DNA of 62,879 nt, counting the filler, from Octopus bimaculoides (lineage: Eukaryota): the NCBI RefSeq assembly GCF_001194135.2. It is 9 parts of 9 records of this genome, joined end to end, with 100 filler letters (N's around TTAATTAATTAA, not from the genome) between each part and the next. Parts side by side here need not be neighbours in the genome. Positions count along the whole stretch, not along the records: positions 29,351 to 32,851 come from NW_026357037.1; 8 more parts are not named here. One strand, given 5' to 3'. The position numbers were made by a program, and so were the translations under genes. The notes under the pieces are model-generated. The model was given only the letters and a program-made list of their open reading frames with translations. It was not told where the DNA came from and ran no database searches. Positions 29,351 to 42,967 of the stretch are shown one piece after another. Within the stretch, counting starts at the first letter, position 1. Every line of letters begins with the position of its first letter.

Positions 29351-29600
29351 CATCATCGTTTAACGTCCGCTTTCCATGCTAGAATGGGTTGGACGATTTG
29401 ACTGAGGACTGGTGAAACCGGATGGCAACACCAGGCTCCAGTCTGATTTGGCAGAGTTTCTACAGCTGGATGCCCTTCCTAACGCCAACCACTCAGAGAG
29501 TGTAGTGGGTGCTTTTACGTGTCACCCGCACGAAAACGGCCACGCTCGAAATGGTGTCTTTTATGTGCCACCCGCACAAGAGCCAGTTCAGGGGCACTGG
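29351..29600 (-). mobile_element. SINE family C 3' part
   Basis: 215/216 identity with 17499-17714 by manual comparison. Confidence 0.8.
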
Positions 29601-29695: not shown

Positions 29696-29746
<51 letters not shown>

Positions 29747-29898
29747 AGGCATATACGTATGAATGCACATAAATACAGATGCATCTATATGTATAAATTT
29801 ACACATGTGGGAATTTATGTACGTATACATATATACATACATGTGCATGTGAATATGTACATAAATATGTGCTTATGTATACATGTGTGTGTGTATGC

Positions 29899-29948
<50 letters not shown>

Positions 29949-30219
29949 GTATTTATACACACACACACACACAGACTTGCCCCACTCCACTCAGCTGGCA
30001 AAAATGAGTAGTGCCTGTAATTCAAAAGGACCAGTTTTGTCACATTCTGTGTCACATTGAATCTCCTGCGTCTGTGGAATACTCAAGCCCCTTACACATT
30101 AATCTTACAAGCAGGCTGTTCCATTGACCAGGTCAACTGGACCCTTCATTGTCATAACCAACAGAGTGCCAGTGACTTACAGTGAGCGACACATGTACAC
30201 ATAAATACAAATTAATTTT

Positions 30220-30418
30220 ATTTACATTATTTACATTTGACGGATATTTGTCCTCGACTTGTTTGTTGTTCAAAATTTCCCCAAGACACCTGATGAAGGC
30301 TGGAGGGTACATCAGCCGAAACGTTGTGTTAACAACAAACAAGATGAGGACAAATATCCATCAAATGTAAATAATGTAAATAATGTACATAATTCCTCAT
30401 CTCTTAAATATAGAACAA
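30220..30418 (+). mobile_element. Hammerhead-bearing repeat (family E): 5'-truncated copy preceded by an inverted copy of its own tail
   Basis: 30220-30270 is the reverse complement of 30331-30381 (48/51). The body 30271-30418 matches 42820-42967. Confidence 0.8.
30285..30330 (+). ncRNA. Minimal type-I hammerhead ribozyme motif
   Basis: Stem I GACAC (30285-89) pairs with GUGUU (30326-30); core CUGAUGA (30290-96) plus an extra A; stem II GGCUG (30298-302) with CAGCC (30313-17); GAAA (30318-21); palindromic stem III ACGU (30321-24); predicted cleavage after GUU at 30325. Confidence 0.72.
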
Positions 30419-30664
30419 ATTAATCTCTATAACCCATGTATAGTTGCATATTTACATTATATACAAAATTAACTTGTATGTTAGAAATTACAGTCTTGTT
30501 AGAATTTTTAAAATTCCAAAGAGTAAATTTCCTTACTCTGGTATCTTTCTGACTCCGTCTTCTATATTTCATTTTCATTTCTTCATTTTCCATTAGTTCG
30601 TTGTCTTTCGTGCATTTCATCCAACCATGTTGATTAACAGTCATCATTTTGCTAACTCAATCAT

Positions 30665-31434
30665 CTAATTGAGAATGACAGGTGGATAACCATATTTCGG
30701 CTGCAATGGAACGAACGGGTAGGGTTTCGGTAGGAAGGGAGTGGAACTGCTTCCTTTAATGCTGTTCAATATTCCACCAAAACCAAAAGATCCAGGATTA
30801 ACGATGCGGCTTCCGAACATACCATTACCGTTGCCTACAGAATTGTAAACGTTGGTAGCGTAACCTCCGAATTTGCCTTGATTTGGTTGGCCGTATGGGA
30901 ACCCTCTAAATGGTGGGAATGCCGGTGGCAGGAATGGCGGTAAGAAAGGACCACCCACAGCTCCCCCTGGCCCCATAGTCGGTGGGAACATAGGGTACTT
31001 TGGTTGATAATAGGCTTGTTGTTGCACTTGTCCTCTTTGATCTTTCTGTTGTTGGTTGAAAGGATAGCCAAAAGTAGGTGGAAAAGGGTATCTGTAGACC
31101 GGCTTCATTGGTGGGTATGGGAATGGCGGAATTTGGAATCGAGAAGGAAAGCCATAAGGTTGGGGTGGCCTAAAGCCGTAAGGGTACTGTGCGAAGTGTG
31201 GTGGTAGGACATGCTGGTCAGTCCTGCTGTGCGTAACAGTATGCATGTGGCCATGTGTGTGCTTCGGAACGTGTGTGTGCGGTGGCACCACTTTCGGCAT
31301 ATAAGGGTAATAGGGTTCAGGCTTCGGCTCAGACATTGGTTCTGCAATTGGTTTATTTTCGGCAGTGGGTTTCCATGGGTCAAACTTGTGGTTCTTCAAC
31401 CAATTGTACAAGTACGAAATATCGCCGTTCTTCT
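30665..31434 (-). CDS. Terminal coding exon of a Pro/Tyr/Phe/Gly/His/Gln-rich low-complexity protein (possible structural or extracellular protein); upstream exon(s) not identified
   Basis: About 256 codons open with non-microsatellite, GC-richer codon usage. Canonical acceptor atatccttttttcttctgcag| gives a phase-1 exon start at 31434; stop at 30665-30667. The 31435-31630 part of the listed ORF is intronic microsatellite. Confidence 0.75.
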
Positions 31435-33149
31435 CTGCAGAAGAAAAAAGGATATACATAAATATAAACATACACATAGATGCATATAAATATATATATA
31501 TATACACACACCACACACATATACATATATATATATATGTTTGTGTGAATATACACATATATAATACATATACACATATATAATACACACATATACATAT
31601 ATATATATATGTTTGTGTGAATATACACATATATAATACATATACACATATATNNNNNNNNNNNNNNNNNNNNNNNNNNNNNNNNNNNNNNNNNNNNNNN
31701 NNNNNNNNNNNNNNNNNNNNNNNNNNNNNNNNNNNNNNNNNNNNNNNNNNNNNNNNNNNNNNNNNNNNNNNNNNNNNNNNNNNNNNNNNNNNNNNNNNNN
31801 NNNNNNNNNNNNNNNNNNNNNNNNNNNNNNNNNNNNNNNNNNNNNNNNNNNNNNNNNNNNNNNNNNNNNNNNNNNNNNNNNNNNNNNNNNNNNNNNNNNN
31901 NNNNNNNNNNNNNNNNNNNNNNNNNNNNNNNNNNNNNNNNNNNNNNNNNNNNNNNNNNNNNNNNNNNNNNNNNNNNNNNNNNNNNNNNNNNNNNNNNNNN
32001 NNNNNNNNNNNNNNNNNNNNNNNNNNNNNNNNNNNNNNNNNNNNNNNNNNNNNNNNNNNNNNNNNNNNNNNNNNNNNNNNNNNNNNNNNNNNNNNNNNNN
32101 NNNNNNNNNNNNNNNNNNNNNNNNNNNNNNNNNNNNNNNNNNNNNNNNNNNNNNNNNNNNNNNNNNGGGTCGATCAATAGGGATCGTGTATCACAGTCAA
32201 TGTAAAAAAACGGGGAACAGATTAGGTTTATCCGTGGAGAGAAAAGCCTACGGAAAAGACCACGGTCACCTCAGGCTTTTTTTTTTTTTTAAAGGTACAT
32301 GAAAGTAAGTACCTTTTGTCTCTTTTTGTTACAAGTCTATGCTTAAAATCGTGTCGTCTTTCATTCTTACCATTCTTGCCACATTTACCCATTTTTTATT
32401 GAAACTTTCATTCGACAACAACATAGATAGGTTTCTTTATTAGCCACACAGGGCTCAACACAGAGGGGACAAAATACAAAGACAACAACATAGATAGATA
32501 GATAGATAGATAGATAGATGGATAGATATCTTACGGTATGACGGTTTGGCACCGGTATTTCCTGGATACACTGAAAAAAGAAAGAATACGTACATATAAA
32601 TATATATGCATACGTCTATATGAATGTGTATATAATTATGTGTGTGTGTGTGTGTATGTGTGCATCTGCAGACAGGTTTGTGTATATACATCAATGTAAA
32701 CATGCATGTAAAAAAACAACATAGATTTATAGACAGGCAGACAAACTGAGTGGTAGATAGATAAATGGATAGATACACTGAGAGATGGATAGTATACACA
32801 AAGATATATATATATATATATATATATATGAATATTATATATATATATATANNNNNNNNNNNNNNNNNNNNNNNNNNNNNNNNNNNNNNNNNNNNTTAAT
32901 TAATTAANNNNNNNNNNNNNNNNNNNNNNNNNNNNNNNNNNNNNNNNNNNNATATATACATAAACATGTACATATACTATATATAAATATATACACACAC
33001 AGAAAGACAGCATGTTGAATGTTACAACAGTAATTGTTAGTGTGTAGAATGCAATGTATGTGATACAGGTTCAATTTCTGAATGCACCCATTTACAATAA
33101 TAATAATAATAATAACAACAAGATTCAAATTTAATATTTCTGAAAATAT

Positions 33150-42540: not shown

Positions 42541-42665
42541 TATTTACATTATTTAAATTTGACAGATATTTCTCCTTATCATTTCAGCTGATATACTCTC
42601 CAGCATTCATCAGGTCTCTTGGGGAAATTTCAAACCTGGGTTTTCATTCTTAAGGTATTTTTTTA

Positions 42666-42807: not shown

Positions 42808-42967
42808 ATAGAACCCAGGTTCGAAATTTTCCCAAGGCACTTAATGAAGGCTTGAGGGTATACCAGCCGAAATGTTGAATTAACAACAAACAAGATGAGG
42901 ACAAATATCCGTCAAATGTAAATAGTGTAAATAATGTACATAATTCCTCATCTCTTTAATATAGAAC
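42808..42967 (+). mobile_element. Family E copy (headless, hammerhead core mutated), back-to-back with the minus-strand copy
   Basis: Aligns with 30271-30418, but the core reads TTAATGA...GAAATG instead of CTGATGA...GAAACG. Confidence 0.8.

What the first reader, a model, noticed from the sequence alone, without database searches (positions are those of the whole stretch)
30285..30330. Intact minimal hammerhead ribozyme in an octopus-type repeat
Seen: every type-I hammerhead element is present in order: GACAC-CUGAUGA-A-GGCUG(loop)CAGCC-GAA-ACGU-U/GUGUU. Stem I has 5 bp, stem II 5 bp, and stem III is the self-complementary ACGU. Known: minimal hammerheads with a palindromic 4-nt stem III are characteristic of Penelope-like elements and retrozymes and are thought to cleave as dimers; an extra nucleotide after A9 is tolerated in natural hammerheads. 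The two other copies here (core at 42582-42613 on the minus strand; ~42841-42875) have core mutations, so this is the only one predicted to be competent. Inference: a self-cleaving RNA module dispersed through this genome.
Basis: partly seen in the sequence, partly recalled or inferred. Interest (0 to 1): 0.85.

Follow-up and report, generated by a model that had tools for sequence, protein, structure and literature searches.

The report
Penelope-type minimal hammerhead in octopus repeat
The motif is a sequence-intact minimal hammerhead ribozyme of the kind carried by Penelope-like retrotransposons, sitting in a roughly 200-bp retrotransposed fragment of a dispersed Octopus bimaculoides repeat; it is a new member of a known kind and probably an inert relic at this site.

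Summary
At 30285-30330 (+) every hammerhead element is present in type-I order, with cleavage predicted between 30325 and 30326. A descriptor scan finds only this hit in the piece. It found one relaxed hit in 200 Mb of random sequence.

The piece is Octopus bimaculoides. The motif belongs to a dispersed repeat found in at least two octopods. A related family forms 128-nt tandem units in an unidentified animal. The window copy matches the family consensus at every core and stem position. Other copies carry G5A, G8A, G12A or CpG decay.

The ribozyme lies in the 60-nt centre of a 53-nt, 94% inverted repeat. The left arm is an inverted, truncated copy of the sequence 3' of the ribozyme. A 10-bp direct repeat flanks the whole unit. 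This fits a Penelope-type insertion, which primes from both DNA strands.

All four signature features of Penelope-element minimal hammerheads are met. Covariation is weak, Rfam models miss this class, cleavage is untested, and a lone copy lacks helix III.

Verdict: a new member of a known kind, of modest interest.

The parts
30207..30216 (+). Left copy of the 10-bp direct repeat ACAAATTAAT. It is a candidate target-site duplication, and its first 3-4 nt may be microhomology with the element's own 3' end.
   Evidence: this is the longest word shared between the 20-nt left flank and 30384-30470. 72 of 5000 shuffles do as well. It ends 1 nt before the inverted arm.
30218..30267 (-). Inverted, 5'-truncated partial copy of the element (reverse complement of about 30334-30383). 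It forms the left arm of the hairpin.
   Evidence: I3: arms 30218-30270 and 30331-30383, 53 nt, 94% complementary; other family copies have ..GGAATGAGAACCCAGATTC.. (peptide MRT..) here, not this sequence.
30268..30284 (+). Family sequence just 5' of helix I (GTTCAAAATTTCCCCAA). This is the start of the direct, 5'-truncated copy, and it is unpaired in the hairpin.
   Evidence: homology of L005, L006, L013, L015, L016 and L051 to the window begins at 30268-30273.
30285..30330 (+). Minimal type-I hammerhead. Helix I is 30285-89 with 30326-30. The core is 30290-96 and 30318-21, with an extra A at 30297. Helix II is 30298-303 with 30312-17. The palindrome ACGU is 30321-24. Cleavage is predicted at 30325/30326.
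30331..30383 (+). Conserved sequence 3' of the ribozyme (AACAACAAACAAGATGAGGACAAATATCC...GTAAATAA). It forms the right arm of the hairpin.
   Evidence: I3. It is conserved in the octopod copies and at about 79% in the 128-nt tandem family.
30384..30417 (+). Distal 3' extension ('tail') present in only some family copies. It ends in TATAGAACA, about 92 nt after the cleavage site.
   Evidence: L013 (both copies) and the P0001 peptide continue to here. L005, L006+ and L015 lose similarity at 30388-30393.
30415..30424 (+). Right copy of the 10-bp direct repeat ACAAATTAAT.

Best explanation
Positions about 30217-30417 are one retrotransposed fragment of a dispersed, apparently non-coding octopod repeat. 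The repeat carries a Penelope-like-element (PLE) type minimal hammerhead.

Shown:
- The motif is complete and equals the family consensus.
- The family is dispersed in at least two octopods.
- The left hairpin arm is an inverted partial copy of the sequence 3' of the ribozyme. It is not a family feature.
- A 10-bp direct repeat brackets the unit.

Inferred:
- The insertion was made by a PLE-type reverse transcriptase/endonuclease that primed cDNA on both strands of an AT-rich target.
- One cDNA (direct) started about 92 nt downstream of the ribozyme cleavage site and ran back to 30268.
- The other cDNA (inverted) started about 34 nt further in and ran only to the position of 30334.
- The two truncated 5' ends were joined in the middle.
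- In the source element the ribozyme would act as a double hammerhead between two copies. There the ACGU palindromes pair to form helix III and helix I is exchanged, so multimeric transcripts can be processed.
- At this locus the copy is solitary, about 335 nt downstream of the stop codon of a gene on the other strand, and absent from the aligned part of the orthologous region. It is therefore most likely an inert, fairly young relic whose intactness needs no selection.
For: Identity of the motif:
- All four extra hallmarks of metazoan PLE min-HHRs are present: a nucleotide between A9 and 10.1, G10.1-C11.1, palindromic 15.2-16.2 and short helix I (PMC4209133; sequence).
- The chance rate is negligible.

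Family:
- Translating the spurious ORF across the motif finds O. bimaculoides A0A0L8FV75 at 80% identity.
- It also finds 119 representative clusters.
- 1832 proteins match the profile.
- DNA was obtained for 8 octopod copies and 7 tandem-family copies.
- The majority peptide of 37 independent clusters, KTPDEGWRVYQPKRC, is the window's except at one loop-2 codon.
- Decayed copies show G5A, G8A, G12A and CpG transitions.
- The octopod copy and the tandem family are 82.5% identical over 80 nt. They differ at N7, loop 2, distal helix I and one helix II pair, which is U-A in one and C-G or U-G in the other.

Insertion anatomy:
-.
- Head-to-head inverted pairs recur in L006 and L013.

PLE parallels from the literature:
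- An inverted 5'-truncated copy adjacent to the element, and a 30-40 bp tail at one end (PMC8557442).
- The anole PLE cleaves and extends both strands. It nicks AT-rich DNA at ATT and starts reverse transcription 111-118 nt into an ORF whose hammerhead cut site is at +26, that is 85-92 nt downstream of the cut site (PMC11167929).

Age:
- The arms differ at 3 of 53 positions.
- I calculate that a 46-nt motif would then be expected to carry about 1 change, so an intact copy is unremarkable.
Against: - No PLE reverse transcriptase or GIY-YIG ORF was seen next to any copy. That covers 12.8 kb of readable L001, 20 kb of L012 and the 1-2 kb Logan contigs.
- No long protein carries the peptide.
- Helix covariation does not exceed shuffles.
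- The direct repeat is only moderately significant (p about 0.014). Its first 3-4 nt overlap the family's own 3' end, and P0001 and the tandem family have similar AT-rich sequence there.
- The two classes of 3' end rest on few copies. L016 and L051 are ambiguous.
- Nearest-neighbour energies do not favour the double hammerhead: -22.3 against -29.2 kcal/mol for two folded monomers.
- The monomer minimum-energy fold pairs UGAU of the core with ACGU.
- No cleavage data exist.
Confidence: 0.75

Rival explanations
1. The element is a SINE-like repeat mobilised by a LINE rather than a PLE. The inverted arm would come from L1-style twin priming, and the hammerhead would be a passenger.
For: Upstream family sequence in L006 and L012 looks tRNA-like by eye. 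Twin priming also gives an inverted 5' segment plus a direct 3' segment with a target-site duplication. No PLE ORF was found nearby.
Against: There is no poly(A) or simple-repeat tail at the 3' end. The hammerhead is of the PLE minimal type. The distance from cut site to 3' end and the optional extension match PLE data. ARAGORN and Rfam do not support a tRNA head.
Confidence: 0.12
2. The unit is a miniature inverted-repeat (foldback) DNA transposon. The 53-bp arms would be its terminal inverted repeats and the hammerhead-like string would be incidental.
For: The hairpin has 53-nt arms at 94% complementarity, folds at -82 kcal/mol with z = -13, and has a flanking direct repeat.
Against: The right arm ends 31-34 nt before the right end of the insertion. 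L005, L006+, L015, L016 and L051 have the ribozyme and 3' sequence but lack the left arm. The centre is the conserved part of the family.
Confidence: 0.05
3. The locus itself is functional. It could be an active ribozyme, or the hairpin could be a regulatory dsRNA, editing or small-RNA element in the 3' region of the neighbouring gene.
For: The motif is intact. The hairpin would form in a transcript of either strand. It lies about 335 nt past the stop codon of P0002.
Against: The hammerhead is antisense to the gene. The orthologous 3' region of another octopod aligns only as far as about 30497 and shows no sign of the element in its remaining roughly 110 nt. The arms have already diverged. Intactness is explained by youth.
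Confidence: 0.05
4. The match to the hammerhead consensus is a chance one.
For: There is no Rfam hit. The MFE fold is only modestly better than shuffles, with z = -2.1.
Against: The chance rate is about 0.005 relaxed hits per Mb and zero strict hits in 200 Mb. The same motif recurs as the consensus of a large family.
Confidence: 0.02

Closest known systems
Minimal hammerheads (min-HHR) of metazoan Penelope-like elements (Cervera & de la Pena 2014, PMC4209133)
   Same: Both are type I with no loop 3. Both have palindromic 15.2-16.2, an unpaired nucleotide between A9 and G10.1, G10.1-C11.1 and a 4-5 bp helix I. Both are mostly dispersed single motifs in truncated copies, with some pairs on opposite strands, and form heterogeneous consensus families.
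   Different: Helix II is 5-6 bp here, against 7-8 bp in the schistosome families. No linkage to a PLE ORF or pseudo-LTR was shown. The library searches found no paper that describes a hammerhead in octopus or in cephalopods beyond the Rfam count in the squid genome paper.
Poseidon PLE of Anolis carolinensis (PAc; PMC11167929)
   Same: In both, a hammerhead lies about 90 nt upstream of the site where reverse transcription starts. There are two start sites a few tens of nt apart (the 'tail'), the target is AT-rich, and both DNA strands are extended, which explains head-to-head copies.
   Different: PAc is autonomous and its ORF starts in helix II. Here no coding partner was found and the host is a mollusc. 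PAc hammerhead activity was protein-assisted and was not needed for insertion in vitro.
Non-LTR retrozymes of animals (Cervera & de la Pena 2020, PMC7229834; bioRxiv 10.64898/2026.07.22.740005)
   Same: These are non-autonomous repeats with type-I hammerheads, thought to derive from PLE pseudo-LTRs. The related 128-nt family (L011, L012) is arranged in tandem.
   Different: The window copy is solitary. Retrozyme units are about 170-400 bp and carry canonical hammerheads with loop-loop contacts. No circular RNA evidence exists here.
Rfam Hammerhead_1 (RF00163) and other Rfam hammerhead models
   Same: The catalytic core and the type-I order are the same.
   Different: None of these models match, even at E<=10. 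I take this to be because the motif has no helix III hairpin. The intact tandem-family copies are also missed.

Membership tests
PLE-type minimal hammerhead (min-HHR) | Conserved core: C3 U4 G5 A6 N7 G8 A9, G12 A13 A14, A15.1/U16.1, and H17 not G | tested here: met
   Positions 30290-96, 30318-21 and 30324-25.
PLE-type minimal hammerhead (min-HHR) | Type-I topology: helix I open, helix II closed by a loop | tested here: met
PLE-type minimal hammerhead (min-HHR) | No helix III hairpin; positions 15.2-16.2 palindromic, so that two copies can form helix III | tested here: met
   ACGU at 30321-24. ACGU is also the consensus in the octopod and tandem families.
PLE-type minimal hammerhead (min-HHR) | Unpaired nucleotide between A9 and G10.1 | tested here: met
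   A at 30297. It is present in all 15 aligned copies.
PLE-type minimal hammerhead (min-HHR) | G10.1-C11.1 closing pair | tested here: met
   G30298 with C30317. The pair is G-C in 7 of 13 copies, and the rest are decayed.
PLE-type minimal hammerhead (min-HHR) | Occurs as consensus families of many copies within a genome | tested here: met
   The copy number in O. bimaculoides was not measured.
PLE-type minimal hammerhead (min-HHR) | Compensatory changes in helices I and II across copies | tested here: inconclusive
   Two helix II pairs show changes on both sides, but the scores do not exceed shuffles. At class level, the free pairs in the JGI hits are complementary in 26 of 42 cases against 15.75 expected.
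PLE-type minimal hammerhead (min-HHR) | Lies in the pseudo-LTR of an element encoding RT plus GIY-YIG endonuclease | tested here: inconclusive
   No such ORF was found near any copy. The insertion anatomy fits a PLE.
PLE-type minimal hammerhead (min-HHR) | Self-cleavage as a dimer | not testable with these tools
   Energy models do not favour the dimer, but they ignore tertiary contacts.
Non-LTR retrozyme | Head-to-tail tandem units, each with a hammerhead | tested here: not met
   There is no second copy in the piece or in readable L001. The 230-nt periodicity idea was rejected.
Rfam Hammerhead_1/3/II/HH9/HH10 | Match to the covariance model | tested here: not met
   No hit at E<=10.
MITE / foldback transposon | Inverted repeats at both termini in all copies | tested here: not met
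   The right arm is internal, and other copies lack the left arm.

The most novel reading that the evidence does not exclude
The hammerhead plus the roughly 90 nt that follow it may form a portable 'PLE recognition and initiation module'. It is carried by non-coding, possibly SINE-like elements in octopods, and as 128-nt tandem units in another, unidentified animal lineage. It is conserved at about 80% nucleotide identity between them. That would mean non-autonomous parasites of Penelope-like elements are widespread in invertebrates. The octopus insertion would then preserve the footprint of two-strand priming from two start sites that has so far been seen only in vitro for a lizard element.
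Probability: 0.35. Interest if true: 0.55.

Novelty: new member of a known kind. Interest (0 to 1): 0.3.

Why it matters
It adds cephalopods to the animals with Penelope-type minimal hammerheads. It shows that Rfam models miss this class. It also offers a small, well-delimited insertion: an inverted fragment joined to a direct fragment, two different 3' ends and a flanking repeat. This could serve as a natural record of how these retroelements insert. It does not change what is known about hammerhead catalysis, and the copy itself is probably inert.

Tried and rejected
- Rfam scans of the piece, of an 86-nt slice and of relatives gave only microsatellite-driven miRNA noise and no hammerhead.
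- The first word-index protein search found a single relative.
- Contigs for P0001 and for the O. vulgaris orthologue P0004 are not on record.
- No second copy exists in the 24.9-kb O. bimaculoides locus, half of which is N.
- A 230-nt tandem periodicity was suggested by the repeat 30219-35 / 30449-65. It was rejected because the alignment score is weak (9 of 500 shuffles) and 30498 onward is conserved orthologous sequence.
- The tRNA-derived head seen by eye is not supported by ARAGORN or Rfam.
- The covariation test on 13 copies is not above shuffles.
- The JGI metagenome scan returned 34 loci of other hammerhead families, not this one. Pfam found no reverse transcriptase in their ORFs.
- Accession-number and sequence-string searches of the literature found nothing relevant.
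- The hosts of L011 and L012 and the species behind the SRR118693xx runs remain unidentified.

Full report
**Observation**

The sequence at 30285-30330 on the + strand reads GACAC-CUGAUGA-A-GGCUGG-AGGGUACA-UCAGCC-GAA-ACGU-U-GUGUU. In standard hammerhead numbering:
- C3-A9 is 30290-96.
- An extra A sits at 30297.
- G10.1-C11.1 is 30298 with 30317.
- G12-A14 is 30318-20.
- A15.1 C15.2 G16.2 U16.1 is 30321-24.
- U17 is 30325, and cleavage would fall between 30325 and 30326.

Helix I has 5 bp including one G-U. Helix II has 5 bp plus a possible G-U. A descriptor I wrote allows helix I and II of at least 4 bp, an optional inserted nucleotide and a palindrome of 0-6 nt in place of helix III. It finds this one site on both strands of the piece and nothing else in the readable part of the surrounding contig. 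In 200 Mb of order-1 Markov sequence of octopus composition it gave one relaxed hit and none with both helices of at least 5 bp. The motif is therefore real and is not a chance match.

Rfam 15 reports no hammerhead, even at E<=10 on an 86-nt slice. Rfam equally misses intact relatives found later. The silence therefore reflects what the models cover.

**Surroundings**

The motif lies in the 60-nt centre of an inverted repeat with 53-nt arms (30218-30270 and 30331-30383) that are 94% complementary. As RNA the whole folds at -82 kcal/mol with z = -13. Helix I stacks on the long stem on its 3' side, and a 14-nt bulge lies on its 5' side.

The piece is Octopus bimaculoides contig LGKD02062165.1. 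On the minus strand, 30665-31436 is the last coding exon of a Pro/Gly/Tyr/Phe-rich protein (P0002). The hairpin lies about 280-450 nt downstream of its stop codon, and the hammerhead is antisense to the gene.

**Relatives**

No eukaryotic genome could be searched by DNA. I therefore used the spurious ORF that runs through the motif (30259-30423) as bait.
- The word-index search found one O. bimaculoides protein, A0A0L8FV75, at 80% identity.
- A full HMMER scan of 1.8 billion representatives found 119 clusters.
- A profile search then found 1832 proteins.

Two groups appear. One is octopod-like, with consensus MRTQVRN..KTPDEGWRV.QPKRC.NNKQDEDKYPSNVNNVNN...SS.KYRT. The other consists of in-frame tandem repeats of about 43 residues (QTPEEGRRTYRPKRCGNNNKDEDNSPKTLNDKNHQASSQKFRQ).

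In this frame, P-D-E spells C-CUGAUGA-A and P-K-R-C spells CC-GAA-ACGU-UG. The peptides therefore report on the ribozyme core. The common variants PKHC, PKCC and QLK correspond to CpG-to-CpA or CpG-to-TpG changes.

I recovered DNA for eight octopod copies. These are the window plus Logan contigs from runs SRR118693xx, an octopod whose orthologous exon is about 80% identical to the window. I also recovered seven copies of the tandem family, from NCBI GCA_052426985.1 and ENA ERZ21867824, whose hosts are unknown.

**What the family shows**

The window's hammerhead is identical to the inferred octopod consensus at every core and helix position. The majority peptide of 37 independent clusters differs only at one loop-2 codon. 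Other copies are decayed:
- G5A in L005.
- G8A in L006.
- G12A in L016, L013+ and L051.
- ACGU changed to ACAU, AUGU or ACUU.

Between the octopod consensus and the tandem family, the ribozyme plus proximal 3' sequence is the best-conserved block, at 82.5% over 80 nt. The differences fall at N7, loop 2, distal helix I and one helix II pair. That pair is U-A in octopods and C-G in the other family, with U-G intermediates.

Formal pair counting on 13 copies gives 74% paired cells against 19-49% for slid partners. It does not exceed column shuffles, so covariation is suggestive only.

A pattern scan of JGI metagenomes left 10.3, 10.4, 11.3 and 11.4 free. It returned 34 loci with 21 distinct motifs from other families. 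The free positions were complementary in 26 of 42 cases, against 15.75 expected. This supports the class, not this particular family.

**Anatomy of the insertion**

In all other octopod copies the sequence 5' of the ribozyme is ..GGAATGAGAACCCAGATTC-AAAATTCC.. Homology to the window starts only at 30268-30273. The left arm is therefore not part of the repeat. It is an inverted copy of 30334-30383 joined at about 30267/8.

On the right, the window, both L013 copies and several peptides continue to TATAGAACA (30417). L005, L006+ and L015 lose similarity at 30388-30393. L016 and L051 are ambiguous.

A 10-bp direct repeat, ACAAATTAAT, sits at 30207-30216 and 30415-30424 and brackets everything. 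72 of 5000 shuffles give a word as long. Its first 3-4 nt overlap the family's own 3' end.

Head-to-head inverted pairs of the repeat recur in L006 and L013.

**Comparison with the literature**

Cervera & de la Pena 2014 (PMC4209133) describe metazoan PLE hammerheads with these features:
- type I with no helix III;
- a 4-5 bp helix I;
- a nucleotide between 9 and 10.1;
- a conserved G10.1-C11.1;
- palindromic 15.2-16.2.

They report that these occur mostly as single dispersed motifs in truncated copies, sometimes as nearby pairs on opposite strands. Single motifs gave no detectable cleavage, and dimeric constructs gave low cleavage. All of the sequence features are met here.

Craig et al. 2021 (PMC8557442) describe an inverted 5'-truncated copy adjacent to PLE insertions and a 30-40 bp tail at one end.

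The anole Poseidon study (PMC11167929) reports three relevant things. The protein nicks AT-rich DNA at ATT and extends both strands. Reverse transcription starts at two internal sites. These sites lie 111-118 nt into an ORF whose hammerhead cut site is at +26, that is 85-92 nt downstream of the cut.

Here the direct copy ends about 92 nt after the cut site. The inverted copy begins about 34 nt further in.

The simplest reading is a PLE-type insertion primed on both strands, with the two truncated cDNAs joined in the middle. This step is inferred. No RT/GIY-YIG ORF was found near any copy, and Pfam found none in the JGI loci.

**Function at this locus**

A single copy cannot form helix III. In a double hammerhead both helix III and helix I are intermolecular. 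Nearest-neighbour energies give -22.3 kcal/mol for that complex, against -29.2 for two folded monomers. Here the 3' strand of helix I also continues into a 53-bp stem.

The orthologous 3' region of the other octopod aligns well only to about 30497. It shows no sign of the element in its remaining roughly 110 nt.

The arms differ at 3 of 53 positions. By my calculation about one change would be expected in 46 nt, so intactness needs no selection. I conclude that the copy is a fairly young, probably inert relic of an element whose source copies carry a working-type ribozyme.

**Verdict**

The claim of competence is untested. The finding is a new member of a known kind and of modest interest. The most useful by-product is the insertion footprint.

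Noticed in passing
L011:300-700; L012:10085-10335: A related family forms head-to-tail 128-nt units, each with an intact minimal hammerhead (CUGAAGA-A-GGCYGG..UCGGCC-GAA-ACGU-U). It is found in an NCBI assembly (GCA_052426985.1) and in long ENA metagenome contigs. More than 1800 called 'proteins' are translations of it. The host animal was not identified.
   Followed up: partly
window 30218-30383: A 53-bp near-perfect hairpin would form in a transcript of either strand. It lies about 280-450 nt past the stop codon of the neighbouring gene. It is a plausible substrate for dsRNA editing or small-RNA production in an animal known for heavy RNA editing.
   Followed up: no
window 29351-29600: The piece begins inside an abundant octopus repeat (catcatcgtttaacgtccgctttccatgc...). 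The first 160-190 nt recur six times in L001 at 88-98% identity. The repeat contains an internal 20-nt duplication at 29512 and 29558 (D6).
   Followed up: partly
window 30665-31436 (-): This is the last coding exon of P0002, a Pro/Gly/Tyr/Phe-rich protein. NCBI names it 'trithorax group protein osa', and no Pfam domain is on record for it. A splice acceptor (ttcttctgcag) lies at about 31437-47. Orthologues at 70-71% identity exist in O. vulgaris and in another octopod.
   Followed up: partly
L006:140-290; L012:9880-9990: Sequence upstream of the ribozyme module looks tRNA-like by eye, with a box-B-like GGTTCAATCC. This hints at a SINE-type head. ARAGORN and Rfam do not support it. In L006 this part is itself an inverted repeat lying between two inverted copies of the ribozyme module.
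   Followed up: partly
L017-L050 (JGI metagenome contigs): 34 loci carry other minimal hammerheads of the same design (CUGANGA-N-GG..GG/..CC-GAA-ACGU). They probably come from host animal DNA in the samples. Several identical copies occur in different samples.
   Followed up: partly
window 29700-29975, 31450-31653, 32590-32851: (TG)n, (TA)n and (CA)n microsatellites produce dozens of sub-threshold Rfam 'miRNA' matches (mir-297, mir-466, mir-3149). These are artefacts of low complexity. The stretch 31492-31635 is a 72-nt tandem duplication (D4).
   Followed up: yes
window 31654-32166: This is an assembly gap of 513 N inside the intron upstream of the exon.
   Followed up: yes
window 30449-30465: TATTTACATTATATACA resembles the start of the left arm (17 nt, 94%). 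The extended alignment is only weakly better than shuffles, so this is probably chance similarity in AT-rich sequence.
   Followed up: yes
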